From contig JAAOMT010000529.1 in assembly GCA_016748015.1 (NCBI GenBank), positions 252,848-316,847 on the forward strand: DNA of 64,000 bases, read 5' to 3'. Below, piece by piece: positions 4,203 to 25,687 of the stretch. Positions within the stretch are counted from its first letter, which is position 1. Every line of letters starts with the position of its first letter. Source of the DNA: Geosiphon pyriformis uo1. Taxonomy: Eukaryota; Fungi; Glomeromycota. The position numbers and the translations under genes are program-made. The notes beneath the pieces are model-generated. The model was given only the letters and a program-made list of their open reading frames with translations. It had not been told where the DNA came from and did not search any database.

Positions 4203-7200
4203 TTACATGGCATCATATCCTCCACCACGTAAATTGCGTTTTTTCTTTCCCGCTGAATTACTAGTATTAGCAGTTCGCCGGATATTTATGGCAGCTGCAT
4301 TAGAACTTTGCCTTTTAAATGCTGCTTTCTGTAAAAATGTAAATAAGGCAAATTTAGTGAATCTGTCCCTAATTTTGAAATTCAAAAAATTCAATTACCT
4401 GTAAATGTAGCCTTATCAATTGGTAAGCTGCGTGGCAATGCTCAATAAGTAGAAATTCGGGGAAAAGTTCATCAACCAAGTCGTAGTTAATAGTGGACGG
4501 CCAACAGTTAAGTGAAGTTTCAGTAAGGTAGAGTGACAATGGTTCCTTGGGGCGAAGAGATTCAGCCGAAAGATATCGTAATATAAATCTTTTTAACGCA
4601 GTAGAAAATGCTTCAGCCGGCAATTTCTTCTTACTGTGTAGGTAATCTTTTCGAGTTTGCAGCTGTTGTGTTTCAAAATCTAAGATCTCGATTAGTCTAG
4701 ATTCAAGTTCATTTGGAAGTGGCTCCTTGTATTGGCTTTCGATACATTCGACCGCTACATCAGCCACTTGATCCTCTACTAATTCGTATAATGCCACAAT
4801 GTGTTTCAATTGAAGTCCAACTTGAAGCATCCGACTGATCCCGTCATTTTCAATGATCAATAATTGGATCCATTGGTGAACGTAGTCTGTAATTAGCATA
4901 TCACCGTCACCAATTGCAGTACGTTTGACGAAACATAAGAGAATTTCCAAGGAAGAAAGAAGTTCTGATCCGTTTTCCAATGCAAAAGAATCCTCAACCA
5001 TCAAATAACCACTGGTGTAAGAGCTTGAAGAAGAGATGGAGCTATTTCTGAGAACCAAAAGTTTCTCGTGTGGAATATTTTCTTGTGGCAAAAGAGCTTT
5101 GACCTCGTTTAATAAAGTCCAGGATCCATGAAATAATTCCATGTGAAATAGGAATTTATCAAGATAAATATTCTCTTCAATGGGTTCAATATAGACCTTG
5201 TCAAACATTAACAAACGTGCAAGTTCAATCTCAATCTTGTATAAATCATAATCAATTTCTTGTCCATGGCCAACTTCCAATTTCCGTTGGCTGAATTTAA
5301 GAATTTCATTATTCCATTCGTATCCGATAATATTAGAAGATCTTGTATCTTCAACCCGCATTGAACGAAGGAGATAAAGTTGTTGTTGGTTATTCACAGC
5401 CTGAACCTGAGTTAAAGAAGCGCTAGAACCAAGCTCTGAGGTGTTATCTTGTTCGAGGAATCTAAGAGAACGACAACCAGGTGAAATGTTGATTACTTCT
5501 TGCAAAAACTTATTTTGCAGGGTAACTAAAAAGTGCAAAATTGCACAAAGATATAATGAATTATCTTTAGCTTCTATTAATCCAAAAATAATAGGAAGAT
5601 CATCTTTAATTATAGGCCTTAAGGCTGGTAGCTCATGACATTGAAATCGGGTTACATGAGGGATTACAATGTTCCAGGCTTCCGCAAATTCCATAAACGT
5701 TGTGCTCAAATAATGGGACATTTCTTCAGATTCTGCAGCTTCTTTGTTGATAAAATCACGAAAAGACATTTCTTGAGCTTGCTTACGGCTTATACGAAGG
5801 GTAAGGCGTGTGGATAGAATCTTAACAAATTTCACAATGGGCTTTATATATTTAATTAGAGGCAACGTTTGTTCATGCTTGAAAAATACTGCCAAAAATG
5901 GGAATTTCGTCATATTTTGATAATCGGCCGAAAAATAAGCACGCAGATTTTCACGATTTGTGTCCCCAATTTGACGCCAAAGTCGTGGCAAATGATTTTG
6001 ACAATATTTTTCATCCATTTTGATTGTTTCGTCAATTTCTGTTTCAAAAACACCGTTGCCTTTTTTTGCAGCAGTAGCCGCTGTCTCCAATTTTGTCCGA
6101 AAATCAATTACAGTTGCATTGAGGTTTTTAACAAAAGGTCTAACATATCTTTCAGTAAAATCACGCTCCCATTCTTCACGCTCAGCTGCTGTGTTGACAG
6201 CGATAGGATTTGTCTCGTAGCCTTTAATCATTTCTGAAAGGATTGCATGGATCACTAACGCTAAATGCTCATCTTGACAATCAAAAATATTCTTTAAGAC
6301 ATCCCAATCTTTGGTAATATGATCGAGACAATAAGCAGCCGGGTCTGGTACATTTTGTAGAAAGGCGTCGACCGTTGGTGAAGGTGTGGATATTCCAATT
6401 ATAGCGTGAACAAATAAATGTAAAATTCGATAAGATGCTGGAGTCATGGAGCGGACAGATTGATAAATGTCTAAGCTCCCTGCCTCAATAATATAGCCAG
6501 GCTGATCTCTTTGGGGGCCTTGTGTAACTGGGGCAGTATCAATTTTAGTTTGCCCCTCAGCTGGTCGCCCATAACCCTTTGGCTCAAATGATTTTTTGCA
6601 TTCAGGGCATACGATATTAATCCCAAGCTGTACGACATTCCCACAATCGCCAATCATGTATCGATATCCACATACACATTGATAACTACGAAGGATTTAA
6701 TGGTTTTAATATTATATATGATATCAAATGTATAAAAAGAGTACTTGGGAATCAAAAAACATACCGAGTGTGACCATCTGCACGCCCAGCGTTTAGAGCG
6801 TTCATAATGATTGCTTCTATATCCGATGGGCATGTTAGAATAAAGGAATTTTGAGAAGCTTGTAATTGATGGAGGTATGAGCACAACGGCGAATAGTTGG
6901 GTGGTAAAGATGCGTGTATTGAAACGATGTGAATGATAACCGAAATCAAAAGCATCTTCGGATTGGTTGTCTGTTGATTGAAGCGAATAAATGGGTGTTG
7001 GTTTTCAAAAATTTTCTCAATTATTTGCCTATATTGAATAGGAATCTTCATTAATTTTATTTTGTTACGCAGAAATTCATATACTCGCAACTCTCCATGA
7101 TTAAATTCCTGAGTAGCAATTCGAGTAGAATGTAGGCGAGCTGTTATAAGCCCCACTAAAGCAATACGTGCACCGACATCATTTTTCAATAATTTATCAA

Positions 7201-10200
7201 GAAATTGATCAAGAGGCCCATCGTTCAATATATAATATAAATTATCAAAAGCACTTTCTGCTTCAGAATAAGGTTTCAAAGACCAATACGGATTTACTGG
7301 AAGTTTGATTCGATTCTTTTCGTTGTCCCATGGCAAATCTCCAAGCCATGGTAAAATTTTTTGCTGAACTTCACAAAACTTTTTGATATTTTCAATAGAA
7401 AATTGTCGTGATCGCAAATCCTTCAGAAAATGTACTTTCAAGGAGTGAACTAAGGCGTTTGGGAATCGCAACGAATTGTTGATGTCTTCAATCCAATTAT
7501 CCATTTCCATAAAATTAAAGCCCACAACTTGAGCTAGCGAATCTTGTAACGACTCAGCGGATTCCCAGAATTGATGAACAAACTCTTTCAAAAATACAAT
7601 TGAAGTTATAACTTGCAAAGGCTCTGAATTATTTAAAGCTTTTAAAGTTTCTATTGCTGGATTGAAGAAAGGTACCAAATCACAAAGTTGATTATTTGAA
7701 AAATATTGTTTTTGTATAATATCGCCGCATAATGCAGCCATTGGAGAATCTAAGGCATCTTTTGCTAGGCATTCGTTGATAAGATTTAATCTCGGCGAAA
7801 AGCGCAAATACTCTTGGGGTGATTCAATAAGACCAAAAAATAAATTCTGCTGTTGCTCTTCTTCAGCAAGGAAGATACGCAAGATAATAGATGCAGTAAG
7901 TGGGAATGGATTCCGAGAGAAAATTTTCTCATAGAGATGTTCGCGCAATGGTGACTCTAGTTCAATAATTTCCAAGAAGCGCGTTAGGAAAGACTGTCGT
8001 GCAGTCATAATAGATTCATTGGGCTCCAAATTATCCAAGATTTCCATAATACTATCAATTGTTTCTATTGAGAAGATTTGTTGATATTTGTTTTGTTGAG
8101 CAAAATGAATCATTCTACTTATCTCAATAAGAGGAATTGCTTTTGTATTAACTAAATCATTGCAAATTCGCAAAAGACAAAGCGACTGTACATTTGAAGA
8201 TTCCGAGAGCTTGGCACAAACTGGAAGTATGTTATTAACTTGACGTTGCCATTGCTCTATTTTCACCACTTCTTCAGTCTGATCAGCTCCTTTCTGAAGA
8301 GAAAAATCATGAATATATCCTAGCATCATTTCCGTTACTTCCCGAATCAGATATCTTTCAAAAGTATCATCGTTATCGTCATCATCGTAATTATAGTCGT
8401 CGTCGTTGTTGATTTCATCATCAGAATCCATTAAAATGCCTTTGCCCTTTGTATTGTGATTTTTAACATTAATCCCTTTCCAAGATTTATCAACTAACAC
8501 CATTTCCACGATCTTCGGACAAAGTTTTGCCAAATTGAGTTTCGCAATAATGACTCCGGAGTTATCCCACCAGTATGCGTGTAACTTAATTGGGTTGAAA
8601 CTCTCTTTAGGGAGGTCCTGTCTTATGATATAACTCAATAGCTTTCCATTGTTATTTCCACTAATTCCTGATGACAATACCATAATAAAATCTTCATAAT
8701 AAAGATCCATTGCATGTTCCAAAAGTGGTGAGCGAAGAGCAGGCAAAGCAGTCAAAATATTGGTGGTAAAACGATCTTGAAGTTCTTCAATAATATGATT
8801 TAGAAGCTGTCCATTATCATCAATATTTTCATCGTCCTCAAAGAGTCTTTCCGATTCTTCTTGATATAGCTTTTTAAAATGATTTATCCGATTCATAAAA
8901 TGTAATGAAAATGGAAATCGGAGTGTATGTTGAGCATTTGGCATCGCATATCCATCAGGTTTTGGGTTGGGCAAATCTTCAATGTTTAGTATTTTCTTGT
9001 CCAAAAACATTTCGTTCCAAAAGAGATGAAGATTGTTTTCTTCACTGTCGCCGTCTGATATTGAGGTGTTAAAGAACGTTTCTAGAGCTGACAGTCTTTC
9101 GAGAACGCATAGGATTTTTGCAATAGGTTGCCGAATATATACCCGAATATAAGATTGAAGGGCGGCTGAGAAGGATGAGAACAAATATAACGATTTTTTG
9201 TCAGATGCTACTTGTAATTGCCAGTCATCGGAGCGGTGCTCTAATAACCATTCTTCTGTTCGCTTTTGTAAAATTGGCAGTAATTTGGAATTCGGAATTT
9301 TCTGTAGCAAGGTTCTAAAATAAAATTATGATAAGAATGGAAAATAAAGAAATCTGATTTCGAATTTAAAGCTTTCGGAAATTTTATTGATCAACTTACT
9401 TCACACGAACAATTTGCTTTGGCGAGGAGGGATACTTATTACAGAGTAGGCACCATAAAAGTTCTTTTTCTATGATTTCCTTAAATGGATATGATGAATT
9501 GAGGATATCATAAAGGTTATACTCCAGCAAGGTCGACAAGGGTTTGTCCGTAGGTGTCAGTGTCTCAATAGTAACCTGATTCCAACCACACATAAAATTA
9601 AAAAATCCCGAATTGTCCTCGTTTCCACGATGAATATGAAGAATTATGCATGCATGTTTTGATGGCACTTGATTTTCCTCTTGCTGGTCTAATCTCATTA
9701 AATATTCTCCACGGAATTGCTCGATAAGGAATTTCGCCAATTTTATACATCCTGAATTTACAGTAGATAGGTCACATTGTAGAATTAACAATTCATCTTT
9801 AGATTCTAACCAAAATCTTTTTATTCGATTTTGCAGTTTTGCTTCGGTTTTGAAGGTTGACAGCTTGTCAATTTGACATGATATAAATCCTTCCAAGATT
9901 AATTTTATATCTGTGTTGATATTTGAGAAAGTATTAATGATAACCTGATGACTTTCTGGAATGGTATCGGTGCGAGTGCTTTCGAAGAACGTCTTAAAGT
10001 AGGCCAAGACATCATCGTGGTATCGATTACCAAAATAGAATTCTTTCCAAAAAACTATTTCATTTCGATTTGTGCTTGCTAAAGCAGATTTCTCGGAGCG
10101 TATAATACCATCCGAAGAAGCAATCATAATGAGAGATTCTTTACACTAAAATTTTGGGAGTAGCAAAAGAATTCATTTAGAAATTTTGGTTATGAAGCGA

Positions 10201-13200
10201 AACGAAAATAAGAAGCAAACAAGTAAAACTGATTTTAATCTGACCTTGGTGATTATTGAGTCTTCATCCATCGTTGGGTTTTTTTTACAATGATCAATGA
10301 CTAAGCTTTGGACAGTTTCTACAGGATTAAATCCTATAAACATATCCTTTTGGGAAAAAGGATTGTTGGGATGTTTGGCTTCCAATTCCACTAGGGTTGA
10401 TATTTGATGTGCCCAATCCAAAAGATAATTTACAAATTTCTTTTGATATTCCTCGAGCGTATCATTGATGCTTACTCTTTGCTTTTCAAACCGGTTTAGG
10501 AGAGGAGGATCTGCATATTTTAAGTTTTTCTCGTCCATAATTAAAATGCACCGGAAATTTTCATGAACAAAGCACATTGGATTAGAGTAGGCGCCTAGAG
10601 CAACTCGTGTGTAGTGTTTCAGATTTTCTTGACTACCAACTAAAATAATTTTTAGACAAAAAAGTAGATTAGAGCAACAGGATTAAAATTTGAACCATGC
10701 AACTCGGAAAAAATAGAAAAATAGCAACTATTTCAAATCTATAAGCACCTGTTATATAGTTTTGGTTCCACAAGTCGTAAAGGCTTCCTGAGATGAGGGA
10801 GAAAGTATTTAAACAAAAAGAACCAATAAAACGCAAAGAGACTTCAAATTTTGAATATTTAACCATAAATTATTTCCAAGTCAGTTAAAATTAGGGGACG
10901 GCCGGCTTCAACGCACATCTAATGAATGTTTGGATAGTGTTCAGAAACGATGATTTTTAAAGCACTCAAACTTCAAAGTCCACTTCAAATTGTAATGAGT
11001 ATTTACCATTATCCGACTTAGAACAGCGTATGAATAATCTTCTTGATCATCTGAAAATTGGGAGCCACAAATTACCTAAAGAGTGATGTAATAAAGCTTA
11101 ATATTTCAGATATGCAAGAAAATTTTTTATTGTAGATATTCACCACTGGGTCTAAGTCTCTTTGACGCAACTGATATGTCAGTATATCGACAATTGAGTC
11201 ACTCTTGCCAATCACCATTAAGTGTCGGGCCTCTTTATCATCAAGGTTTGTGCTAATTAATTCCTCTACCGGAATCGAACTGTATTCATATGGTTTTCCT
11301 GGAAATTTTTATATAAAATAAATTTTTTAATCTTCAAAATATTACAAGATGAAATTCGATGTTGGATTTACCATTATTAAGGCTTGTGAAAACTTGTCCA
11401 AAGTATTGCTCACATACGTCTTTAGTTTGTTCAGTTCCTCCGAAATTTCGCGCTAATGCCACTTGCAAGGAGTCCGCTAGAAAGATTCTATGATAAGATA
11501 CACATAATTTCTAGATTACCTAGGAGTATTTAATAAATTTTTAATTACCTGATAAGTCAGCTCCGCTCAAACTCTTGACTAAAGCATAATAATCTCGTAA
11601 ACCTAAAAAACAGAATAAATAAACATTCACAAAATACATCTAGTTAAATGAACATTTAATTTTAGCGTACCATGAAAATTTGAAAATTTTTGATTCTTCT
11701 CATATTCTAGATATGCATCAGCTAGCAGACCGTATTTTCTTTTATAGTAATCACTGAATCGATAAACATAACCCTCTTTTTTTTCTAACAGGCGAGTACT
11801 TGTTTCTATTAAGTCTTCACGATCGAAGTTAGGCCGTTGAACAAGAAGAGCTCTACTTGATTTGCTATTGTCCAGACGCCAATTGCTGATACCGATCACA
11901 GAAATCTTAGGACCATCGTTCGGATAGCTCGGTTCGAGAAGTGAGTGTAAAACTTTTAGGGGATTGAATGGGCTAGTTTCGGCTAAACCAACTGCAAACC
12001 CAGAAGTTAAAAGAAAGAACAGTTAGCTGAACACAATAATTGTTGGTATTATTGGTATTATGGGTTATGATGAGTCTTTTGTTCCCACCTTCGTCAAGAA
12101 GAACAACAGCATTTAATGGAAATTCCTCAGAACTGGTTTTCTGATAATTATGCGCTTTTTCAAAAACTTTGAGTATACCATCAGAAGTTGATGAGGAAGA
12201 ACCTTGATGTGGGATAACATAAATCTAAATTGGAAATCGTGTTAATCACCAAATATAAAATACTGAAATACTTTTCAATCATTATATAAAGTTTAATCAC
12301 TTGTGGCAATTTTTGAAAATAACCATCATCAGAATCCGTTCCACGAAGATTCTGACTTATGATGCGTATTGCTAATGATTTGGAACTTGAAAAAGGATCG
12401 AAAAAAAAATTTGAAATTTTTAGAGTTTCATAGATAATTATAATGTTAGCCAAATTTTTTACCTTCCTGGAGCCCCAATTATAAAAACTGGAATACGAGT
12501 TAATATACAAACAACCATTACAAGTATATTTTCGAGCAGGGCAGAGTTCGCGGCAATTGATGGCCCTGTGTTCATACGGTCAAAATAATCTTTTTGTTCT
12601 TCTTTGTTTATATCTAAAAATCCTTCTGGGTCCATATTAATTCCGTTCATTGCAAAAATAGCACACATTCTTTGTCGATATATTAGTCGGTCCTTTTTAT
12701 CGTACATTCTGGCCTATTATGTTATATATTTTTACAACAAAATTGAGAAACTAGTTAGTGTGATTCCATCACCAAGTGTAATACATATATAGACATGCCT
12801 GATAACACAATCCTAATGCCAAACAAATGGAACGTGTCAAAATAGACCACCGATCATTCGGGTACTTGTAGTATCGGAAAATATTTTTAGAAATTTTGGG
12901 TCCCGGACGATTTCGAAAACTCTTTTGAAAAAAGTCAACGAGTTTTATAGCACGTTTACAATCACGAAGGCTGACACTGTTTGGCTGTAAAACCAATATA
13001 AGGTCATTAATGTCAAGATTTGATGATAGAGTGTGAAACAATTAGAAATTGTGGCTTATCCTAACCTCCTCCTTTTCTCGAATAAATTGTTGCGAGGCAA
13101 ATAATAAATCAGCAAACCCATTCTTAAGAGCCTCTGGTCCGAGGAACTTGTCTACCATAATCTGTATATATTTTTTCTCATCTTTTGGCTGAAGAACACC

Positions 13201-16200
13201 ATAATCCCAAACGTAATCCAAAATTTGATCGGGTAGTGGATGCACCTGATAAACCAATCTACTTCGCTCTTCATAACGTTTTTGTACTACCAGGCCAGCG
13301 CTAGTTTGACCTTTAGTTCGTAATCGATAACTTGAAGAAATTTTTTATAGTTAAATTTCAAACAAAATTTCTCGGATGGAGCCAGATTTATTTTAATCAT
13401 ACTCACGGATTAGCCGCAGCGAAAAGGCGAATGTTGTGGTGGATGAGTCTTCCGTTGAGCATTCTGTGTGATATGAGGTCGGCGAGCAATCCAATATGAT
13501 TGCAAGTATTTATTTCATCAAAGAATAACCAGGTCTCGCCTAATTGCGCTGCGTTGGTAGCTTCTTCCATAAATTTAAGGATATCGTGATCACGTATTCC
13601 AGCATGTAAATTCAAGGCCTTAAATTGTACTTCAATCACCAATGATAAAAAATTAAGAAGACTGGTCTGTAATAAAAATTAATCATTCTTAGCAAAAATT
13701 CTTGAGCTTGCAATTGAACATAAAGGTTTGAAATAATTATTACTTTGCCACACCCAGCTTCTCCACAAACAATTACAGGAATATTAGCACGAGCTCGCAA
13801 TAATATTAACGCCATTTTTAATATATTGTCACCAGATAATGCGTACGAGGGTAGGTCGAGTTTATGAACTGATTTTCGGGCGAGTGATTCTAATTTCAGG
13901 AGCAATACCTCAGCAGGCATTTCGTGGTAATCATCTAATGCCCACTCTTTACTGTTGGCACATATCCGGAGATCAGCTTGTTGACCTTTTAACAAGCTTT
14001 GAACGTTAACGGGAACTTGGGCCTTATCTCGATAGAATGCAGCGATCGAATCTGGTGCCTGGGACAAAAATACGACCAATAAATGATTTGATTCTTCCCA
14101 AGCTACAAAAATTGAAATAAAGATTAATTACAAGAAATGACTTTTGAGTCGCATCTAAATTATGAAAAAAATTGATAAATTACGTAAGATGGCGCCCAAA
14201 CGTGCATTGTCCGCTTCAAAAGTATTTTCCAATTGTGCGAATTTAGAAGATATTCCTCGCGTGGCAAAATCTTTTCCCGAGGCAATAAATTGTTCGACCA
14301 ATATAGAGCGAATATCACGTGCTTTGACCATGAGCGAAAGATTTTCCACGCGGAAATATGAGCTTGCTGACATACGGATCAATTGATCAGCAAATACGTT
14401 AACAAATATTTGAACGAAACGATGAGATAATATATTTTCAGTGTTCTCTTCAAAGAAATATTGGCGTATCAAAGTTTGACAACGATCGGTGGAAACAGGA
14501 GGACCAGGGTGGAAAGAAATATTTGTATTGTCGAGAATTCTTCTATCATAAGCATCCAAATAACGAGCTACAACTTGGATGGGACTGGTGAGCTCTTGTG
14601 ATACAATCATATTTTCGATATTCCAGGTTATATGATGTGATAAAAGATAGCCAGTAAATGGAAGAGAATTAAGTAGATATTGCTCGACAGTAGATGCAAT
14701 CTCTATATAGACATGGGTATCAGGAAGTTCTGCGATATCAACTTCATTAGAAATCATGCCCAACGTCAAAAGCTCAAATAAGAACATGTTGACATCACCA
14801 GAATGATCCACAGAGAGTATGTTGAGATGCAAGCTTTCGAATTTCCGAAGATTACAGTTTTTTAATTGGCACGTCAATCTTTCAAACTGAACACAATCAC
14901 TGATGAGAAAACTTCGTGGTATCAAACCGTTTTTCATACTAGCTTGTTGAATCCATTCAGTTTTTCCTTGACCAGATAAAGCTGAAGAAACACATGTAAC
15001 ATTGGGACAAATTTCTGCATAAATTTTTGTCATGGAAGAGGCATTGAGGCCGTTTGTTATATGGACATTATCAGGAAATTGGTCGATTATGTGGTGATGC
15101 ACTCCTGGCTCATGACAACAAACTAACGCCAAATTATAAGATGTCTCTATTTCACGAAGTGTCCGTATATCTTTGACCAGATTGTATTGTATGTCGTAAT
15201 CAAGCACCTCTAAGTTTGCGATGCAGAACAATTGTTCTTCTAAACCGTTGATAAATATAGCAATTATGAAAAGTCAGGATCAAACGAAGAGGAATAGTTT
15301 GGAAATTTCTTTGACAAGACCAATAAAATCAAGCTTACTATATCCATTTCTAGAAGCAAAAAAACACCTTTTGATGAAGAGAGAAAGTTCCTCGGCTGTG
15401 GTTGAAGATCTACATATGAGAATTTCCCATGGTTCAGGATATGCTCCATGATTTGCGAAAATTGACATTATGGTATTAGCTAAACGTGTTTTATCACAAG
15501 CCGCAATAAATAATTGGCCAGGTTGAACCACATCAGTCATTATCAGCTCAATTTGCGCAAAACCTTTTCGCGTTCTTTTTGGTAACCTTTCAAATATATC
15601 AAAGAGCTGTGATCCAATTTCACTCAATATTCTATCAAAAGATTCTGATCGGTAATCAAAAGCCTGAAGGTCCATTGGAGATGGTAGTTGGGCTTGTTTG
15701 TGTACATATCTCAAAAGTATTTCACAATTGGCTTGATTTTGAGATTTATCAGTTGCATTTCCCATAAAATAATCATAGAATGTCAAAATATGACGCGCTG
15801 TGAAAAAATTCAAATAATAATGATCTTCTTGTGATTTGTTGACTATGTCCTTCCTTTGTGTGTAAGATAATTAGTTCGTGATGTATTTAAGAAAATAAAA
15901 GCTAAACACAAAAATAATTACCACTTTTCCAAGTCAATTTTGAGAATTTCAAATAAGTCGATCATTTCTTCAAGATTCATTGCACTCTCGTTAAAGTCAC
16001 GATATGCAAAATGTCCTAATTCCATCAACGTTGATGCGAGAGCTACGATCTGTTGACTCATATCAACATGACGCACAAATGTCGTCATATAATCATTCTC
16101 ATCTTCCAAGTCAGAGCCATTTTCTTTTTCAACTAACATGGGATTAATTGATTTCGCTGACTTGGAAATTAGTAGAGCACGCCCACGCAAATCTTGCAAT

Positions 16201-19200
16201 TCACTAAGACTATATTCGGTCACTTTCACTTTGGAGCGGTATGCCAATGATACGGTACATTTATATTCGTTTGGAGGACGTTTAAAGGTATAAGTTCCAA
16301 TTGTGACTGCATTTTTGATGCGCTCTTTGGTCACCTCGCCACGGTTTGAAATATTTTTGTACATATTTTGTAATGCGAGATTATGTGCATTACATAGCGC
16401 AATTTTTGTTGAAAGAGATGAATTTTTCACAAAGACTGAATTCAATTCCCTCACAAAATCATCAAATTTTGAAGTTCCTAAATAATATTATAAAATTGCA
16501 AATGAATTAAGTAGACCAGAAAGTTCAATAGAAAGGCTAAAACACTGAAATTACTTGATACCTGCAAAACCCATCACTGGCAGAAGGAACTGTTTGACTT
16601 CAATTAAAGACGATACTGTGTCTTCTTGGATTAATCTCTCGTCCGAATGGTCATCAACCCCATTAATCAGATTTTTAATATCATGTTCAGCGACAGATCG
16701 TAAAAAGCCAAGGAATTCACCGGAAATTGAAAGTTCCTTAATCAACAACCAACAATCCGGATTTACATCACGAAAACAAGATTTGAGTTTTCGCCAAATC
16801 TCTGATAATTGTCCTAGTAACATTTCCTCGCTGTTGAGATCATTTGAGAGCGAGAGCAGCCAGCTTTTTGAAGTAACAGTTACCTCAAAAATTTCGGCTG
16901 TTATTTGTCTAATTTATTCAAAGGTCGTAAGACATAAAAATTATGAAAAATAATAATTAATACTTGTTTAATAAGAAACTTACAATTGGTCAAGCTGCTC
17001 AATCCAAGTTGGAATCATGGAGAGATAGCTAACTACATCTTCCAAGTCCTTTGTTACACGCCACGTCATACCAGATGTCATTAATTGCAGTTCTGTTTTA
17101 ACGTCATTAACATTAACATTTCTCCAGAGTAAGAGGGCCTTAGAGCATTTGAGCATTCTCCAATTGGCATATTGACTACGTAATTTATTATATTGTTCAA
17201 ATGTGGTTGGCAAAACCTCTTGTGCCAGTTTCAAGACGGATAACTTTTCGGGCTCTTGATTCAAGCAATCCTCGAAAACATTTGCAAAGGTTTTTGATTT
17301 GACATAAATATTTGAACGTTTTGCGATCTCCAAAATAGGTTGATGAAACATCCAATAATCTAAAACAAGTTTAAATTAATTAATTTAGGCTTTCCATTTT
17401 TGTAGGAATTAATTTTACTAACCAGGCAATAGAGCCTCATTCAAGGTGGTTTTGTCAAATAATTTCATACGCTGACGAACATCCTCAATATACTCTTGAG
17501 CATCAATTAATTTAGGACCGCTACAAAAGCGAGTATAAAATTCGTTCAAATACTTAACCTTTTGTTCATATATTTTGCACTCATCACGAAGTATTTGAAG
17601 CCTTTTGTTAGTAATATTAAAAGCAATGGTATGAGATGATTGACGTCCAGCTTCAAAATAACGAATCAGCTGATCATTCGAATATTTTATCAAAGTTTGG
17701 AGCATGCTTATTTGTATAGTGTTTTTTTCGATCATCTCTGCTAACTGAATGACAGCATGACGAACACTTTCTACATGACAATGAGCGCCTAACCGATTCA
17801 CCGAGCCTGAAGCCATTAAGATGGTAGCCCAAAAGTCGGAGCTCGAGAGCAAATTGACATGAAAGACATTTAAAATGATGCCGGTGCCCGATTTCGGAGA
17901 ATGAGCTTGCAAACGAGTCATGATATAAAATAAAATTTCCTCGCATAATCTAAAAAATAGTAGAGGATTCACACAATTTACAACATATTTTATCGAGTAT
18001 CAATCATTGCTTATTACTAAAAATAGCACTTACTTATTTGGAACGATCAGCTGGCTTTCATTATTGCTGCAGCCACATATATTCCTTATATATACCATGA
18101 GTTTTTTATCAGTATATTTAACAAATTCTAGACGCTTTTTCAATATTTCTTCAAAGCATTTAGAAACCTCAGCTCTCAATTTTTGACCAATCAACGACGT
18201 TGATTTGAACAAGAGCTCATCAGAGAAAATCTCTACTCGTTCAAGAGCAATTTGGTACAATTCGTTGAAAAGTGTTTTGCTTTTGACGATGACCGGGTAA
18301 ATGTTCGAGAGTTGCAAAAATATATGAAATACAATGTTGAAGTTTTCTTTTTTACGATCATTGCGACTGCAAATGTGCCCAATTATTTGTCGATACCATT
18401 GAAGACAAATGGGGTGAGCTTTTTTGGAGATTTTTTGGAGATTTTTTGAGGATTCGAAAAAGGAACTCAATAATTGGGGAAAGATTTCCAACAGATCTGG
18501 GACCTCGGATGTAGAAACAATGTCCAAAGATTGCATAGAATCCTCTGGAGTCCAATAAAGCCTTCTTTCATCAAGGAGCACTAAGATACACTGAATATTC
18601 TGTGAAGTCCAATTGAATTTCTGAGAACTCCGGTTTAAAAATTCCATAACTTTAGAACGAAATTTTGACGCTAAAAACTTTTGGACGTCTTCTGGGATTT
18701 CTTCAAGACGATTAAGTAAAATTATAGCATCATCAGCGGTGGTTAGATGCAAAAAATGATTACCCACGTGAACGTGAATTTGGCCAAAAAGAAAAGAGTC
18801 TGTTCTGGCTTTGTCATTAAGGATATCTTTCCATAAAAAGGTCATTAAATCGATGCTAGTCGTTAAAGAAATCAAGGACTGATGTTGAAGTAAAATATAA
18901 ATAGATGTGTTAAATGGTTATCATTTTACAGGTTTGCAAAAATATAAAAATCGAACCTTAAAGATCTTTGAATAGAGAGATGGCGATGAAATCTTGTCGA
19001 TGGCAGGTTTGACGATTTGAGATAATGAAGTTTTGAGACGTCTCAGGGTTTCCCCTTCATATTTCCAATTTTGAACAAGTTTCAAAAATTTATATTCGGG
19101 ATCGATTTCTGGAGCTGCAATAAATGCTTTCATCCATTCAAACTCGGTGGATATTGACGAGTTTTGTTGAACTAAGGCTGAAATTACTGGCAAGAGCAAT

Positions 19201-21107
19201 TTTAAAGTATTTGAAGGAAGATTTCCAGACTGAATGACATCAAGGCCTTCCAGCAAAGGTACAGAAGGAAATGAGTCGTGGAGGCGATAAGTAGTCAAAC
19301 TCTTTTTGCGTTCCTGTTCCATCACATAACCTAAAAGAACATACAAGAATATTTTCTGGTGGTCGTGTATCTCATCTTCTAGCAAACAGTCTTTAATGAA
19401 ATTGATATTTGTCACAGCTGTAATCTGGGATGGGTACGCTTTTCGTAAGGCTTGATATTCCATAATTTTGTCCTTTGTATTTTTCCCATCCAATGATTGG
19501 TAGATATCACAAACAAAATGCCATTCATTGAAATTTTTTATCCAAAGATTTGCATTATTACTCCATATGTCGTAATGAATTTCCTCCATTTTTAACTCCC
19601 GATTCTGTTGTGCTGTATAACCTTCAAAGAGGGTGTCATTTGGCCACCTTTTAAAAGGAATTCTTTCCGAAATAGTTGGTGAAGGATTCCAAATTCCATA
19701 CTTGTAATGGATTCTTAGTGTTGAGGTGAATGAAGACATTGGAATCTTCACTGGATCTGAACTCCAATAACTTGCGTTACTGCTCCATTTATAAAGTTTA
19801 ACTTTGGGTATTTTCCATTCACCGAGTTCCGGGATGCTGCCGAGAACAACAGGTTTCCAGTGACTGGGCATATTCGTTGGGAGATGAACCCGAAATGAAA
19901 TCAGCTTGAACTCTTCCAAACTTGGTGATTCTTTTTTCTCGCGAATATTGTCCATAGAATCCTCATTTCGCTGATTTTCCCATATATTTTGATGAGCATC
20001 TTGCTTTTTATTCGTAGTAGAAGGCGAATCAAAATTTTGATTCGCCGCAGTGACTTGTTTGTAATTTGGATTTTTCGTTTTTGCATTATTTTCACTGTGA
20101 GAAAAGGCCGAATTTGTTGCTTCGTCGAGAGTTTTACCAAGATCGGAACCTTGTGTTATTGGAGGCAAAGTATTAGCACTTGAAGTTTGTGAAGAGGGTG
20201 AAGATCCATTGTCGGCAATTTCAGGAGATTCTTCGGATTTTGTTTCCTTCTTTTTCTTTTTCGTTTCTGCATTTTTTTCACTGTGAGAAAAGGCCAAATT
20301 TGTTGCTTCACTGAAAGTTTTACTAAAATCGGAAACTTGTGTTATTGGAGGCAAAGTATTAGCACTTGAAGTTTGTGAAAAGGGTGAAGATCCGTTGTCG
20401 GCAATTTCAGGAGATTCTTCGGATTTTGTTTCCTTCTTTTTCTTTTTCGTTTCTGCATTTTTTTCACTGTGAGAAAAGGCCAAATTTGTTGCTTCACTGA
20501 AAGTTTTACTAAAATCGGAAACTTGTGTTATTGGAGGCAAAGTATTAGTACTTGAAGTTTGTGAAGAGGGTGAAGATCCGTTGTCGGCAATTTCAGGAGA
20601 TTCTTCGGATTTTGTTTTCTTTTTCTTTTTCTTTTCTGCATTATTTTCACTGTGAGAAAAGGCCAAATTTGTTGCTTCGTCGAAAGTTTTACCAAGATCG
20701 GAACCTTGTGTTATTGGAGGCAAAGTATTACCACTTGAGGTTTGTGCAGAGGGTGAAGATCCATTGTCGGCAATTTCAGGAGATTCTTCGGATTTTGGTT
20801 TCTTTTTTTTTCCCTCACTACTGTTGGGTAATGAACCTTCATCTTGGTCGGATCTGCCTAGATGTGCAAATAATTATTCAGAGAAGATAGAATTTCAGTA
20901 TTAACTCATACTTTGATATTTATTTATCCATTGGCCAGGAATTTATGTTATAATCTCGTTTAAAGTACCAATAAAATCAGAGTTGACTTGATTAACGGTG
21001 CTTCTCAAAGTTTCAGAGTCTTCTGGGCTGCGGCTTCCACTTTTATCTAGTTGGATAGTAAAGTTGGTAGGGAGCTTTTGATCTTTGGGTTCACTATCAC
21101 TACTCAT
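4203..21107 (-). CDS. RNF213: RNF213/mysterin-like giant AAA+ ATPase and RZ-finger E3 ubiquitin ligase, 28 exons, ~4,901 aa, apparently intact
   Basis: Hand-built exons: 21107-20969, 20857-18957, 18878-18034, 17949-17423, 17359-16984, 16908-16562, 16477-15922, 15853-15339, 15239-14184, 14102-13744, 13666-13407, 13330-13066, 12984-12799, 12713-12463, 12385-12301, 12224-12089, 11991-11671, 11602-11549, 11476-11372, 11298-11144, 11075-11007, 10918-10864, 10787-10749, 10639-10245, 10145-9400, 9314-6765, 6685-4399, 4328-4203. Total 14,706 nt with all 27 intron phases consistent. RNF213-type motifs in order: SALSGQGKT; IPVIVCGEAGCGKTS with WLFFDEIN; LVYQVHPLP; SVSLRD; IPVFIIGAPGSSKSL with VVLLDEVGLAE; GISNWRLD; FHGLRDYYALVK; RNFGG; LYDLWNQNY; PPLLNRFEK; RZ-like CVCGYRYMIGDCG...CPEC. 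The symbol denotes family homology, not proven orthology. Confidence 0.93.
20075..20812 (-). repeat. Coding tandem repeat, four units of 183-186 bp (61-62 aa), in exon 2 of the RNF213-like gene
   Basis: Anchor ctgtgagaaaaggcc recurs at 20095, 20281, 20467 and 20650 (spacings 186, 186, 183). Unit approx. KKKKKETKSEESPEIADNGSSPSSQTSSANTLPPITQxSDxxKTFxEATNLAFSHSE. Confidence 0.97.
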
Positions 21108-21530
21108 AATTAGTTTTTCAATAATTTAAGGACTTTGGACTTTTACTTCAGGCTCACCCTTTGCGTTTTTTGGTGAGCAAGGAAACGCAGTAATATCCAC
21201 CCACAATTTTGAACAGGACCCATTATTAAAAAGATCAAACGCCACCTGATAATCAATTTAATCAATCAACCATGCATTTCTTTGTTGGCAAACAAAATCC
21301 CATTGTTAAAAGAAAAACTTTAAATCCTGTTTTCTGGTAATATTTGTCCAAGGGAGTTTTGGCTCTCTTTGTTGGAGGGAAGGAACTTACCAAAATAAGA
21401 TTAATTGATGCATGCACGAATTTTTGTGATCGACATAACTGAAAAGTTTAGCATAGCTATTGATTAAAAGCATTTGCAAAAAGTCTTGCCAAAAAAATTT
21501 CGTACTTTTTTGATTTGAATTTTTTGAATC
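21108..21530. promoter_or_regulatory. 423-bp intergenic region between two divergent start codons, candidate bidirectional promoter
   Basis: Predicted ATG of the RNF213-like gene at 21107 (minus) and of the RING-Ubl-TerD gene at 21531 (plus). No specific element identified. Confidence 0.65.
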
Positions 21531-21927
21531 ATGATATGCTCAGAGTGCCAAATCGACAAGCTATCAAATGAATACCCAACATCTATAACTATAAATTGTG
21601 AACATATTTCATCATTATGTTTACGGGTAAAACATAAATAGTTGTTCATATTAAAAAATCTTTGATTATTTGAAATAATTTCGACTTTGTTTAGTGCCTT
21701 CTTTCCGAACTTGCAGCCCAAAAAAGTGAACCAAATGAAGACCGTGAATTACCTTTCTTCTCCGCGTCTTCCTCCTCGTCCTCCTCTTCCTCCTCTTCCT
21801 CTCATTCAACTCCTGAACCCACAGAATACTCTAAATTTCATTGCCCTGAATGTGAGGTCCCAATGACCATCGAGGAAGTTCAATACCTTTTTTCTGTATG
21901 GGAAAACGCTCTTTTCAAGCTTAATAT

Positions 21928-21967
<40 letters not shown>

Positions 21968-23055
21968 AATAATGATGATAATGATGATAAACCAGATATT
22001 AATTCAAATGAAAATGGGGAAGGAACTATTGCTGGAGGACAATTTTATGTGGTTATGTTAAACGGTCATAAGATTGCATTAGATGTAGACAGAGTTCCTT
22101 CAATAATTGCCTTAAGGGGACAAATTCAAAATCGGCTTGGAATCCCAACATCAAAACAAAAGTTACTTTTCAATCGGAAAGAATTACTTGTAAGCTTTTA
22201 TATTTGCCAGAATTTTTATTGATTTTTTTTCAAGTTTAATAATACTATTAAAAAAATTAAAGGATACACAACCTGATCGACAAGCGAGTACACTTGCTCA
22301 TTATGGAATTCGTCATAATAGCAATGTACAACTTATTATAGTTTTGTATTCAATAACCAATGCTGAAACTATAAAAACATTAGTTTTTGAATTGAGTTGG
22401 GGATTTCCCATCAAGGGAGTAGACTATCTAGACGGAACATGTATGGTCTATTGTGGTGATATTCTAATACGCAAGGTAAATAAAAGTTATCGATTTATGT
22501 GAATCTCAGTTAATTATTTACTGCAGTCATTGTCTATTTGAAGTATGACTACATGTCTGTATATTATCCAAGCTTCCCGCATATGAGACATTCTGGTGAC
22601 GTTATGGACACAGCAAACAAAAGAGGTTAGAATAAAATTATGCTTAAATTCATTTTCTAAAAAATTTTTCATCGACATTATCTCGAAAAATATTAATTTT
22701 GTAATTCGATTGTGTTGGAAAAAAAGGTAGTCATCGCATCACAGCAAATCTCGATAGGCTTCCAGAAACGGTTACTCAACTTTACTTTATCCTGAGCGCA
22801 TTTAATGCTGGGACTATCGGTGAATATCCTAAACCAAATTTTGAGATGTATGATGAAGCGAAACCAAACAAGCCATTGTGCACTTATACCATTCAGAATG
22901 CTGCTGAATCACAAGCGGTGATCATGTGCTGCGTGTCACGAGCAGGAAGGGATGGTATATGGCAAGTGATAGAAGTGGGTAAATTGACGCCTGGTAATGC
23001 TAACGATTATGATCCGATAGAAATTGCTATAAGTGAATTTGGCTTGTTAGCCTAA
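21531..23055 (+). CDS. RING finger - acidic linker - ubiquitin-like - TerD-like domain protein, 5 exons, 404 aa
   Basis: Exons 21531-21626, 21695-22189, 22263-22475, 22544-22625, 22727-23055 (1,215 nt, phases consistent). RING: MICSECQIDKLSNEYPTSITINCEHISSLCLR|C-x48-CPEC. Ubl: FYVVMLNGHKIAL...LGIPTSKQKLLFNRKELL|...TLAHYGIRHNSNVQLII. TerD-like: FELSWG...DYLDGTC...HSGD...ITANLDRLPETVTQLYFILS...LCTYTI...QAVIMCCVSR...WQVIEVG. Confidence 0.85.
21929..21967 (+). repeat. (GAT)13 coding microsatellite, poly-Asp linker
   Basis: Perfect GAT run inside exon 2, followed by NNDDNDD. Confidence 0.95.
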
Positions 23056-24073: not shown

Positions 24074-25687
24074 ATGATTAAACGAAAAGGAACCCAAGTT
24101 GGTGGTGGTGACAATGAAACTTCCAAAAAAGCGAAACTCACACCGACAAAGAGTACTCAAACCTTCTTAACTAGTTGGGTGAAAACTCCAACTTCTGAAA
24201 CGGATAACGCGTCTTCAGAAAACAAAACCTCTGATATTAGTCCCGTCAAAAGCGTTGCATTAAGTTTTGAGGAGGTGACCAAAAGTTTAGCAGCTGATAA
24301 AAAAGGATTGTTAAGTTTAGAGGTTGAGACTATGAACCCTGAGTGGTTACGAGTGCTGAGCGGTGAATTGATTAAGCCTTATTTTCTTAAGGTAACATTT
24401 GAAGCTGCTAGAAAAAAGTGACACGTGGGGGTTTTCTAGTCGAGCGGTCCGAAATCTAATATGCTTTTTATAATTTCTAGTTAAAGGAATATTTGCAAGC
24501 TGAAAAACAAAATAAGAAAGTAATATTTCCTCCCGGTAAATACAGATTCATCCAAAAGAGGATTAGATTTCTTACCAAAAATATGGTTCCCTAACAAAAA
24601 TTAATCATTATTATAGAAAAGGACATTTACAGTTGGTCGCGATATACCCCGTTGTCAGGCGTCAAAGTTGTCGTTGTCGGTCAAGGTATAAACTTAGCTC
24701 GTTTTACATTGCCCATCATCTATGTGATCTGCCTTCAAATTTCCTAATCATATTTTCAGACCCATATCATGATAATGGACAAGCCCATGGTAAGAGTGGA
24801 TTCTTCAAAATTGTTTTAAGAGAACTTAATTTAATTGCATCAGTTTGAATTCCAAAAAAGGTTTATGCTTCAGTGTCCAGAATGGCATAAGAGTACCACC
24901 ATCTCTCATAAATATCTATAAAGCATTGCAGCATGATATACCTACTTTTCAAGTACCTAATCATGGGTAAGTTTCAAATTTTTGCTCTAAAAAACTTAAC
25001 TCACTAACAGAACATTTCTAGACACCTTGAAAATTGGGCAAAGGAAGGGGTTTTATTGTTGAACGCATCGTTGACAGTTCAAGCTCATCAAGCGGCTAGT
25101 CATAGTGGAAAAGGCTGGGAGCAATTTACCGGTAATTTCCTTTAGTCACACATCTGGCGTTTTTGATCCTTATACTCAACCTATAATTTTTAAAATCTTT
25201 AATCTGATTTCTTCTAGACGCCATAATCCAATATCTCAACCAAAAGAAGAGTGGCCTTGTTTTTATGTTATGGGGATCACACGCCCAGAAGAAGGGGAAG
25301 AATATAAATAAGGTCAGTGAAATCCAATTTAAGTAGTTGAATTTAGTCAATTGGAGCAAAACTAAATATTCCCGCTTTGGATCCAAGACGCGGCATTGTG
25401 TACTTCAAGCTGTACATCCATCACCCTTATCATTCCGCCACGGATTTTTAGAATGTCGTCATTGGTCCAAAGCCAATGAATACCTGAAAAGCCAAGGCAA
25501 GGAACCTATTAATTGGAATTGCCTTGTAGAACGTGATCCGATCCAAGATCTGGACATCCCCAGCACAACGTCGAATGAAGATGAAACAGTTTCTATTGAG
25601 GATGTTTCTCGTATCACCACTACCCTTGAGGAAAAGCCTATTGCCACTCAAGACCAAGTGTTGGATGATCCGGTTGTTTTGCCTTGA
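24074..25687 (+). CDS. UNG1: Uracil-DNA glycosylase, family 1, 8 exons, 360 aa
   Basis: Exons 24074-24391, 24481-24535, 24617-24685, 24760-24789, 24861-24966, 25022-25131, 25218-25312, 25388-25687 (1,083 nt). Motifs [52 protein letters not shown]. Confidence 0.97.

What the first reader, a model, noticed from the sequence alone, without database searches (positions are those of the whole stretch)
4203..23055. Candidate two-gene system: RING-less RNF213-like ligase head-to-head with a RING-Ubl-TerD gene
Seen: an intact ~4,901-aa RNF213-like gene and a 404-aa RING + ubiquitin-like + TerD-like gene diverge from start codons 423 bp apart. The giant protein shows no RING, and the small neighbour begins with one. 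Known: animal RNF213 carries both RING and RZ modules and ubiquitylates LPS on cytosolic bacteria; TerD domains belong to bacterial stress and anti-phage Ter systems; Glomeromycotina host endobacteria. Inference: the two genes are co-regulated and form a fungal cell-autonomous immunity module, with the small protein acting as adaptor, sensor or RING partner in trans. I know of no description of this pairing, but could not search the literature.
Basis: partly seen in the sequence, partly recalled or inferred. Interest (0 to 1): 0.9.

Follow-up and report, generated by a model that had tools for sequence, protein, structure and literature searches.

The report
RNF213-like ligase with conserved RING-Ubl-TerD neighbour
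A fungal relative of the human immune and moyamoya-disease ligase RNF213 lacks its own RING domain and lies start-to-start with a small RING + ubiquitin-like + TerD gene; the same pairing is found in other mycorrhizal-type fungi and in an amoeba, which points to an unrecognised partner of the RNF213 family.

Summary
The minus-strand gene 21107-4203 is an intact RNF213 homologue of about 28 exons. Family profiles hit solved RNF213 structures at E 8e-41 (AAA3) and E 1e-37 (RZ finger plus C-terminal domain). It also has an N-terminal CBM20, two Walker A/B pairs and no RING. The plus-strand gene 21531-23055 encodes 404 aa. All four introns and a poly(A) end are seen in spliced public contigs. Its domains are a C3HC4 RING, a ubiquitin fold and a TerD fold. 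Both genes are single-copy here, and the start codons are 423 bp apart.

The pair is also head-to-head in Ambispora gerdemannii, Ambispora leptoticha and the amoebozoan Planoprotostelium fungivorum. In Gigaspora rosea it is adjacent in tandem. An oyster locus may show it too, but that is unverified. No shared flanking genes were found. In Rhizophagus irregularis the giant gene has no such neighbour, and most paralogues examined lie elsewhere.

A functional link is therefore well supported. RING-in-trans, Ca2+ sensing and an immune role remain inference. The one complex prediction gave no answer. No searched paper links RNF213 with TerD or with mycorrhizal fungi. First-stage notes on this same stretch made the same observations.

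The parts
4203..21107 (-). RNF213-family giant gene, about 28 exons and about 4,700-4,900 aa, stop codon at 4203-4205
   Evidence: Stop-free segments. Collinear with the Ambispora orthologue. Last exon carries a basic tail as in homologues. Profile hits to RNF213 structures.
20071..20812 (-). Four tandem 186-bp repeats in exon 2, encoding 62-aa Ser/Lys/Glu-rich repeats at the N-terminus
   Evidence: Tandem Repeats Finder: period 186, 4.0 copies, 93% matches. Translation.
19690..19850 (-). CBM20-like carbohydrate-binding module, matching residues about 52-106 of window:18924-20003:-
   Evidence: Pfam CBM_20 at 19.9 bits, E 6.6e-4, in the window. It matched all 5 orthologous N-terminal pieces, best E 2e-5. 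The conserved motif is visible in alignment A8.
13406..14127 (-). AAA3-type module. The Walker A motif (GEAGCGK) is split by an intron. The Walker B motif is FFDEINT.
   Evidence: Motifs read. Profile A7 hits RNF213 AAA3 at E 8e-41, against midasin at 3e-10.
11630..12713 (-). AAA4-type module. Walker A (GAPG|SSKS) and Walker B (VVLLDE..GLAE) lie across small exons.
   Evidence: Motifs read. The exons match the Ambispora orthologue at 64-90% identity.
6755..9325 (-). Large exon at the position of the RNF213 E3 module; it has no RING
   Evidence: No Pfam family. No zinc-finger-like Cys/His cluster and no RING pattern. A three-sequence profile of this exon gave no RNF213 hit, so its homology to the E3 module rests on collinearity alone.
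6571..6685 (-). Variant RZ finger. The Cys equivalent to C4516 is kept. The H4509 and H4537 equivalents are both Tyr. An extra Cys gives a CxC...CxxC pattern.
   Evidence: Pfam PF20173 at 27.6 bits against a cut-off of 27. Aligned to the RNF213 RZ finger. Family comparison. Residue roles taken from PMC11549300.
4372..6570 (-). RNF213 C-terminal domain homologue
   Evidence: Profile A1 aligns collinearly with positions 4454-5158 of the solved human RNF213 chain 8s24_A, E 1e-37. The ESM Atlas's nearest clusters are RNF213 fragments.
21108..21530 (.). 423-bp divergent intergenic region. RNA contigs reach 21144 for the giant gene and start at 21502 for the small gene.
   Evidence: Table 8. Short blocks shared with the two Ambispora intergenic regions.
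21531..23055 (+). RING-Ubl-TerD gene, 5 exons, 404 aa
   Evidence: Model. Four spliced joints and a poly(A) end. Single copy in the genome.
21531..21850 (+). C3HC4 RING (C3, C6, C23, H25, C30, C33, C82, C85), split by intron 1 and carrying a lineage-specific poly-Ser insert
   Evidence: The eight ligands are invariant or nearly so across the family. The N-terminal profile hits the RINGs of RNF4, BRCA1, RING1B, BRE1B and RNF213, E 3e-4 to 0.13.
22040..22330 (+). Ubiquitin-like domain, split by intron 2
   Evidence: Pfam ubiquitin at 22.7 bits on exon 2 alone, and in 45 of 48 family members. The orthologue model matches ubiquitin at TMt about 0.65.
22350..23052 (+). TerD-like domain across exons 3-5
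   Evidence: Pfam TerD at 23.1 bits on exon 5 alone, and in 47 of 48 members. The orthologue model matches TerD structures 2qng, 3ibz, 2qz7 and 2kxt at TMt 0.74-0.79.

Best explanation
This is a conserved, divergently transcribed gene pair whose products most likely act in one ubiquitylation pathway.

Shown. The giant gene is a true RNF213-family protein. It has an N-terminal CBM20, a dynein-like AAA core with two intact Walker A/B modules, a cysteine-bearing RZ finger, the RNF213 C-terminal domain, and no RING. The neighbour encodes a RING, a ubiquitin-like fold and a TerD-fold domain, an architecture conserved end to end from amoebae and fungi to invertebrate animals. Both genes are transcribed. 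Their adjacency recurs in distant lineages with no shared flanking genes found.

Inferred. The AAA/RZ protein binds a glycan- or lipid-bearing surface through its N-arm and transfers ubiquitin by way of the RZ cysteine. The small protein is its partner. Its RING could recruit an E2~Ub to prime, extend or regulate that reaction. Its Ubl could dock on the giant protein. Its TerD domain could sense Ca2+ or a small ligand. A role in surveillance of intracellular microbes or damaged membranes rests only on analogy with animal RNF213.
For: RNF213 membership: profiles hit RNF213 structures at E 1e-37 (RZ finger plus C-terminal domain) and E 8e-41 (AAA3). Pfam RZ scores 27.6 bits. CBM_20 matches all 5 orthologous N-terminal pieces. 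Walker motifs are read.

Partner domains.

Adjacency. In the window the start codons are 423 bp apart. Ambispora gerdemannii is head-to-head. Ambispora leptoticha is head-to-head, and a second paralogue lies 220 bp past the giant gene's 3' end. In Gigaspora rosea a paralogue from another clade lies 941 bp upstream in tandem. Planoprotostelium fungivorum is head-to-head with 112 bp between the genes; that locus has 49.5% GC, and its giant gene matches at 25-30% identity, E 4e-97. In Crassostrea virginica a 5,057-aa gene with faint AAA_5 and AAA_7 matches lies divergent, 5.8 kb away.

Other points. No flanking ORF of those loci matches the 64-kb window. Both genes are single-copy here. Spliced, polyadenylated RNA of the small gene and a 5' exon contig of the giant gene occur in the same run.
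Against: In Rhizophagus irregularis the giant gene has no small-family gene within about 3 kb upstream or 8.5 kb downstream. The small-family copies examined in R. irregularis, R. clarus, Diversispora epigaea and Paraglomus have no giant gene within 10 kb.

The small family has many paralogues, which also pair with each other. No fusion of the two families was found among long TerD proteins.

The complex prediction gave no answer. In this genome the RZ finger has lost both histidines and the IGG motif, so its activity is uncertain. The oyster neighbour could not be verified as RNF213-like. Contig depth cannot show co-regulation.
Confidence: 0.6

Rival explanations
1. The adjacency is neutral. 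The two unrelated genes merely share a compact divergent promoter that happened to persist, and the small protein is a general RING E3 with its own substrates.
For: The R. irregularis giant gene lacks the neighbour. Most paralogues examined are dispersed or paired with each other. No fusion proteins were found. There is no support from complex prediction.
Against: The head-to-head pair is seen in an amoebozoan and in Archaeosporales at 25-30% protein identity, with no shared flanking genes found. A different paralogue in a different orientation sits next to the giant gene in Gigaspora. Paralogues lie at both ends of the giant gene in A. leptoticha. By my own rough estimate, chance immediate adjacency of a given small family to one gene is of the order of 1e-4 to 1e-3 per genome.
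Confidence: 0.17
2. The two are functionally linked, but the small protein is an antagonist or turnover factor. On this view it is a RING E3 that ubiquitylates and limits the giant ligase, or a Ubl decoy that occupies its ubiquitin-binding site, rather than a co-ligase supplying a RING in trans.
For: The RNF213 RING is dispensable for RZ-dependent ubiquitylation in animals (PMC11549300), so a trans RING need not be catalytically required. About half of one molluscan cluster of RZ-finger proteins carry a cis RING family, and a bivalve also has the small gene. Word depth of the small-gene contigs is much higher than that of the giant-gene contigs in run X3, which is only weakly informative.
Against: There is no direct evidence either way. 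The giant genes confirmed next to the small gene in fungi and the amoeba are all RING-less on record, which fits complementation at least as well.
Confidence: 0.15
3. In this genome the giant protein is no longer a ligase, because both RZ histidines and the IGG motif are lost, and the pair is a relic or has taken on a non-catalytic AAA or scaffold function.
For: In the window both the H4509 and H4537 equivalents are Tyr, and IGG has become FEP. Ambispora and Rhizophagus keep IGG and the second His.
Against: The nucleophile Cys and four Cys ligands are kept. The whole 4,700-aa frame is intact and conserved, and it is transcribed. The H4509 equivalent is non-His in every glomeromycotan sequence read (Tyr in five, Ala in Ambispora), always with a compensating extra Cys. 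A Tyr at the H4537 position also occurs in Racocetra and Paraglomus.
Confidence: 0.08

Closest known systems
Animal RNF213 (mysterin), the dynein-like AAA+ / RZ-finger E3 ligase
   Same: The order of parts is collinear: CBM20, AAA core with two active modules, RZ finger with the nucleophile cysteine, then the C-terminal domain. Profile E-values against solved RNF213 are 1e-37 and 8e-41.
   Different: There is no RING in the E3 module. The RZ zinc site is CxC...CxxC rather than C, H, C, C. In this genome the proposed general-base His is Tyr. The N-terminus carries tandem acidic repeats. The gene is paired with a RING-Ubl-TerD gene, a pairing the paper searches did not find described for animal RNF213.
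Bacterial TerD / TerZ / TerE proteins of ter operons (PF02342)
   Same: The same beta-sandwich fold, with TMt 0.74-0.79 to 2qng, 3ibz, 2qz7 and 2kxt. The HSGD motif and neighbouring Asp residues are conserved.
   Different: This is a eukaryotic, intron-containing gene. The domain is fused behind a RING and a Ubl. The acidic GDGDDE-type stretch that I recall from bacterial TerD is not conserved in the family consensus. There is no ter operon context.
RING plus Ubl E3 ligases, for example the Ubl-bearing RBR ligases Parkin and HOIL-1L
   Same: An E2-recruiting zinc domain is combined with an internal ubiquitin-like fold that cannot be conjugated. HOIL-1L appears among the weak fold matches.
   Different: There is a single C3HC4 RING with an unusual H-x4-C spacing at the extreme N-terminus. 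No IBR or RING2 domain was detected. The C-terminal domain is TerD.
ZNFX1, the other RZ-finger protein
   Same: It shares the RZ finger family PF20173.
   Different: ZNFX1 is an SF1 helicase with NFX1-type fingers. Here the RZ finger follows a dynein-like AAA core and is followed by the RNF213 C-terminal domain.

Membership tests
RNF213 family | Dynein-like AAA+ core in which two modules (AAA3, AAA4) carry Walker A and B motifs | tested here: met
   GEAGCGK with FFDEINT, and GAPG-SSKS with VVLLDE. The AAA3 profile hits RNF213 at E 8e-41 against midasin at 3e-10.
RNF213 family | RZ finger (PF20173) with the nucleophile cysteine equivalent to C4516 | tested here: met
   27.6 bits against a cut-off of 27. 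The GDCG cysteine is aligned to C4516. The zinc-ligand His and the general-base His are replaced.
RNF213 family | RNF213-specific C-terminal domain after the RZ finger | tested here: met
   Profile A1 is collinear with positions 4454-5158 of the solved human RNF213 chain 8s24_A, E 1e-37.
RNF213 family | CBM20 module in the N-arm | tested here: met
   CBM_20 matches 5 of 5 orthologous pieces, best E 2e-5. The window alone scores 19.9 bits, below the 23.3 cut-off.
RNF213 family | RING finger inside the E3 module | tested here: not met
   A RING pattern matches none of the three minus-strand frames. No RING family is on record for the orthologous products.
RNF213 family | E3 activity by transthiolation, ubiquitylation of lipid A or other substrates | not testable with these tools
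   Needs biochemistry.
RING finger (C3HC4) | Eight Zn ligands with cross-brace spacing | tested here: met
   C3, C6, C23, H25, C30, C33, C82 and C85 are invariant or nearly so in 32-70 sequences. The H-x4-C spacing is unusual.
RING finger (C3HC4) | Sequence-profile similarity to known RINGs | tested here: met
   Hits to the RINGs of RNF4, BRCA1, RING1B, BRE1B and RNF213, E 3e-4 to 0.13. Pfam RING models match only 3-5 of 48 members.
RING finger (C3HC4) | E2 binding and ligase activity | not testable with these tools
   Needs biochemistry.
Ubiquitin-like fold | Beta-grasp fold | tested here: met
   Pfam ubiquitin in 45 of 48 members. The model matches ubiquitin at TMt about 0.65 and 26-28% identity.
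Ubiquitin-like fold | Exposed C-terminal di-glycine for conjugation | tested here: not met
   The domain is internal and runs on into the TerD domain without Gly-Gly (translation).
TerD (PF02342) | TerD beta-sandwich fold and profile match | tested here: met
   TerD in 47 of 48 members. TMt 0.74-0.79 to four TerD structures. Window exon 5 alone scores 23.1 bits.
TerD (PF02342) | Ca2+-binding acidic motifs | tested here: inconclusive
   HSGD and several Asp residues are nearly invariant. The acidic run that I recall from bacterial TerD is not conserved. No bacterial sequence was aligned here.
TerD (PF02342) | Membership of a bacterial ter operon (TerA/B/C/Z neighbours) | not tested
   This is a eukaryotic spliced gene. 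Its neighbours are the RNF213-like gene and a gene that looks like a uracil-DNA glycosylase, which was not checked.

The most novel reading that the evidence does not exclude
The ancestral RNF213 machine was a two-component system: a RING-less AAA/RZ ligase encoded head-to-head with a RING-Ubl-TerD partner. The pair is retained in Amoebozoa and Glomeromycotina. The partner gene, and possibly the pairing, also persists in invertebrate animals (bivalves, gastropods, echinoderms, amphioxus). Animal RNF213 later acquired an internal RING, and vertebrates appear to have lost the partner. On this reading the partner is a missing regulator or co-ligase of a protein central to cell-autonomous immunity and moyamoya disease.
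Probability: 0.3. Interest if true: 0.9.

Novelty: new variant of a known kind. Interest (0 to 1): 0.8.

Why it matters
RNF213 is a heavily studied human protein. It is the main moyamoya susceptibility gene, it ubiquitylates LPS, and it forms coats on bacteria, parasites and lipid droplets. Its regulation, its partners and the purpose of its RING domain are still unclear: PMC11549300 states that no bona fide RING substrate is known.

A small protein whose gene sits beside RNF213 homologues in lineages as far apart as an amoebozoan and glomeromycotan fungi gives a concrete candidate partner that can be tested at the bench. It also suggests an evolutionary reason why the RING of animal RNF213 is dispensable.

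The result shows in addition that RNF213-type machines are not confined to animals. One is present in a fungus that is probably Geosiphon pyriformis. That identification is my inference from genome size, contig number and the sister position to Ambispora. Geosiphon houses intracellular cyanobacteria, so the handling of endosymbionts by such a ligase becomes a testable question.

Tried and rejected
Single-exon phmmer searches against solved structures gave no RNF213 hit; profiles were needed.

A three-sequence profile of the E3-module exon gave no RNF213 hit. Homology of that part rests on collinearity only, and the site where a RING would sit could not be mapped.

Complex prediction was run with window RZ finger plus C-terminal domain residues 1-660 and Ambispora partner P0218. 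The verdict was no answer. This is not evidence for or against binding, and only one of many possible domain pairs was tried.

A search for fusion proteins found none. Long TerD proteins carry EF-hand, ankyrin, FN3 and chitobiase-C domains, and none carries RNF213 parts.

The metagenome scan for more loci returned 41 loci of 1-9 kb, many apparently transcripts. None contained a giant-gene fragment, so it is uninformative.

The oyster neighbour could not be verified. There was no tblastn hit, and no recognisable exon lies in the 4.2 kb of that gene within the locus. The genome search cannot reach eukaryotic loci.

The bacterial promoter and terminator scan is irrelevant to a eukaryote.

The joined (spliced) proteins of the two window genes were built only inside scripts, for local tblastn, blastp and a tree. 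They were not sent to any database, fold or complex tool. Those searches used single exons by reference, or orthologues' protein ids. The joined-model database search was left out.

Full report
WHAT IS THERE

The window is AT-rich eukaryotic DNA. It comes from a 128.3-Mb assembly of 792 contigs. Those figures are close to the 129 Mb and 795 scaffolds tabulated for Geosiphon pyriformis in PMC9453076. The small protein is also sister to Ambispora in a tree. The genome is therefore probably an Archaeosporales fungus, likely Geosiphon. This is an inference.

THE GIANT GENE

Long stop-free minus-strand segments run from the ATG at 21107 to the stop at 4203-4205. Translated pieces of the Ambispora leptoticha orthologue match the window collinearly from 20123 to 4384. 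The in-frame HSPs have no stops and cover about 4,636 residues in about 28 exons. The gene is therefore intact. My automatic splice model gave 4,748 aa and is imperfect between about 10.6 and 13.7 kb.

Single exons gave nothing by phmmer against solved structures. Two family profiles then settled the identity.
- A profile of the last large exon with 11 glomeromycotan homologues hits every RNF213 structure at about E 1e-37. The match is collinear over the RZ finger and the C-terminal domain.
- A profile of the AAA3 region hits RNF213 at E 8e-41, with midasin far behind at 3e-10.

Further evidence agrees:
- Pfam finds the RZ finger at 27.6 bits against a cut-off of 27.
- Two Walker A/B pairs can be read in the sequence.
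- A CBM20 module matches all five orthologous N-terminal pieces. This corresponds to the CBM20 described for human RNF213 in PMC11549300.
- The ESM Atlas's nearest clusters are RNF213 fragments.

A RING pattern matches none of the three minus-strand reading frames, and the only zinc-finger-like Cys/His cluster in real coding sequence is the RZ finger. No RING family is on record for the Ambispora, Gigaspora or Planoprotostelium products.

The RZ finger is a variant. The Cys equivalent to the nucleophile C4516 is kept. The zinc-ligand His (H4509) is non-His in every glomeromycotan sequence read: Tyr in five and Ala in Ambispora. An extra Cys gives a CxC...CxxC pattern. In this genome alone among those read, the IGG motif is also lost. 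The proposed general base H4537 is Tyr here, as it also is in Racocetra and Paraglomus (residue roles from PMC11549300).

THE SMALL GENE

The exons are 21531-21626, 21695-22189, 22263-22475, 22544-22625 and 22727-23055, giving 404 aa. Public run X3 is labelled as a doubtful RNA run. Its contigs nevertheless carry all four GT-AG joints and a poly(A) end after 23115. A further X3 contig covers the giant gene's first exon as far as 21144. Both genes are therefore transcribed, and the untranscribed gap is at most about 360 bp. The tool warns that contig depth cannot rank expression.

Domain evidence:
- TerD. Pfam scores exon 5 alone at 23.1 bits and matches 47 of 48 family members. An AlphaFold model of the Ambispora orthologue (pLDDT 85.6) matches four TerD structures at TMt 0.74-0.79.
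- Ubiquitin-like domain. Pfam matches 45 of 48 members. The model matches ubiquitin at TMt about 0.65.
- RING. Eight Cys/His ligands are invariant or nearly so across the family. The N-terminal profile hits the RINGs of RNF4, BRCA1, RING1B, BRE1B and RNF213 at E 3e-4 to 0.13. Pfam RING models match only a few members, so this is a divergent RING with an unusual H-x4-C spacing.

Both genes are single-copy in this genome.

THE FAMILY OF THE SMALL PROTEIN

An exhaustive HMMER search with exon 5 found 383 representatives. Proteins of about 350 aa with the same end-to-end architecture occur in the following:
- many Glomeromycotina, often as several paralogues
- Jimgerdemannia (Endogonales)
- Planoprotostelium (Amoebozoa)
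- Pterocystis (a centrohelid)
- the bivalves Mytilus and Crassostrea
- the gastropod Gigantopelta
- the sea star Patiria
- amphioxus (Branchiostoma)

IS THE PAIRING MORE THAN CHANCE?

Loci where the two families are adjacent:
- Ambispora gerdemannii. The giant gene is head-to-head with the orthologue, about 270 bp apart, and a second paralogue follows.
- Ambispora leptoticha. The giant gene is head-to-head with one paralogue, and another paralogue lies 220 bp beyond its 3' end.
- Gigaspora rosea. A paralogue from a different clade lies 941 bp upstream on the same strand.
- Planoprotostelium fungivorum. A 4,084-aa AAA/RZ gene is head-to-head with the small gene, 112 bp apart. tblastn confirms the homology at 25-30% identity, E 4e-97. 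The locus has 49.5% GC against 25-37% in the fungi, so it is not a fungal contaminant.
- Crassostrea virginica. A 5,057-aa gene with faint AAA_5 and AAA_7 matches lies divergent, 5.8 kb away. I could not verify that it is RNF213-like.

None of the flanking ORFs of the Ambispora, Gigaspora and Planoprotostelium loci matches anything else in the 64-kb window. The flanks compared reach about 10 kb.

Counter-examples:
- The R. irregularis giant gene has no small-family gene within about 3 kb upstream or 8.5 kb downstream.
- The copies examined in R. irregularis, R. clarus, D. epigaea and Paraglomus have no giant gene within 10 kb. Some of them pair with each other.
- In Jimgerdemannia the small gene lies at the start of its contig, so the upstream side is unknown.

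The link is thus strong but neither universal nor necessarily exclusive.

MECHANISM

Shown: domain content, conservation, transcription and recurrent adjacency.

Inferred:
- The giant protein acts as in animals. ATP-dependent engagement of a surface would be followed by ubiquitin transfer through the RZ cysteine.
- The neighbour is its partner. Its RING could bring an E2~Ub. This is attractive because every giant gene confirmed beside it in fungi and the amoeba lacks a RING on record.
- The Ubl could be a docking handle.
- The TerD domain could be a Ca2+ or ligand sensor.

An antagonist or turnover role for the small protein fits the data about as well. An immune or symbiont-control role is analogy only. 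The single complex prediction gave no answer and is not evidence either way.

WHAT IS KNOWN

Paper searches found no work linking RNF213 with TerD, or describing RNF213 in mycorrhizal fungi. The library is incomplete, so an earlier description cannot be excluded.

RNF213-type AAA modules are in fact widespread. They turn up in Mytilus, Symbiodinium, Amoebophrya, Reticulomyxa, Orpinomyces and Chlorokybus. The fungal gene in itself is therefore a new member of a known family. What is new is the conserved partner gene and the RING-less, Cys4-type RZ variant.

Three first-stage notes on this same window described the same stretch. I tested their claims here.

LIMITS

Spliced proteins of the window were used only inside scripts.

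Noticed in passing
window 20071-20812: Four tandem 186-bp repeats inside exon 2 of the giant gene encode 62-aa Ser/Lys/Glu-rich units. The R. irregularis and A. gerdemannii orthologues also start with long low-complexity repeats of unrelated sequence, so a repetitive acidic N-terminus looks like a family trait.
   Followed up: partly
window 21767-21801 and 21928-21988: A 9-bp repeat encodes poly-Ser and a trinucleotide run of about 20 copies encodes poly-Asp in the small protein. One lies between RING ligands 6 and 7 and the other before the Ubl. These columns are gaps in about 99% of the family, so the inserts are specific to this lineage.
   Followed up: partly
window 6571-6685: The RZ finger in this genome lacks both conserved histidines (both are Tyr) and the IGG motif. 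Ambispora and Rhizophagus keep IGG and the second His. Every glomeromycotan sequence read replaces the first His and adds a Cys, giving CxC.
   Followed up: yes
window 21108-21530; L009 9729-10000; L013 9719-10000: The divergent intergenic regions of the window and the two Ambispora species share only short blocks, TAACTGA and a block of the form AAAA(C/G)..TTTGC. These may be promoter elements or chance matches.
   Followed up: no
L011 8268-11328 (R. irregularis); L005 10001-20917 (R. clarus); L009 10001-12955; L004 10001-12442: Small-family paralogues often lie next to each other. They are head-to-head in R. irregularis, 8 kb apart and convergent in R. clarus, and in tandem in A. gerdemannii. 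The D. epigaea gene P0013 carries an internal duplication of the TerD domain.
   Followed up: partly
L012 3042-4472 (R. irregularis): The N-terminal CBM20 region of the R. irregularis giant gene appears twice, with a masked run between the copies. This is either an assembly duplication or a real tandem duplication.
   Followed up: no
proteins P0277, P0310, P0315, P0334, P0344, P0346-P0350: RNF213-type AAA3 modules are found in Mytilus, Amoebophrya, Orpinomyces, Symbiodinium, Chlorokybus and Reticulomyxa. The family is much wider than animals.
   Followed up: no
window 24074-24421: The next plus-strand ORF after the small gene begins with a Lys-rich tail followed by a block that looks to me like a uracil-DNA glycosylase N-terminus. 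It was not checked with any tool. In Ambispora the corresponding neighbour is instead a BRWD1-like WD40 gene.
   Followed up: no
window 2001-4000: An extremely AT-rich stretch (13.7% GC) lies just beyond the 3' end of the giant gene.
   Followed up: no
proteins P0049, P0069, P0075, P0078, P0103, P0119: Large eukaryotic proteins of 1,000-2,800 aa combine TerD domains with EF-hands, ankyrin repeats, FN3 and chitobiase C-terminal domains. This is a second, unexplored set of eukaryotic uses of the TerD fold.
   Followed up: partly
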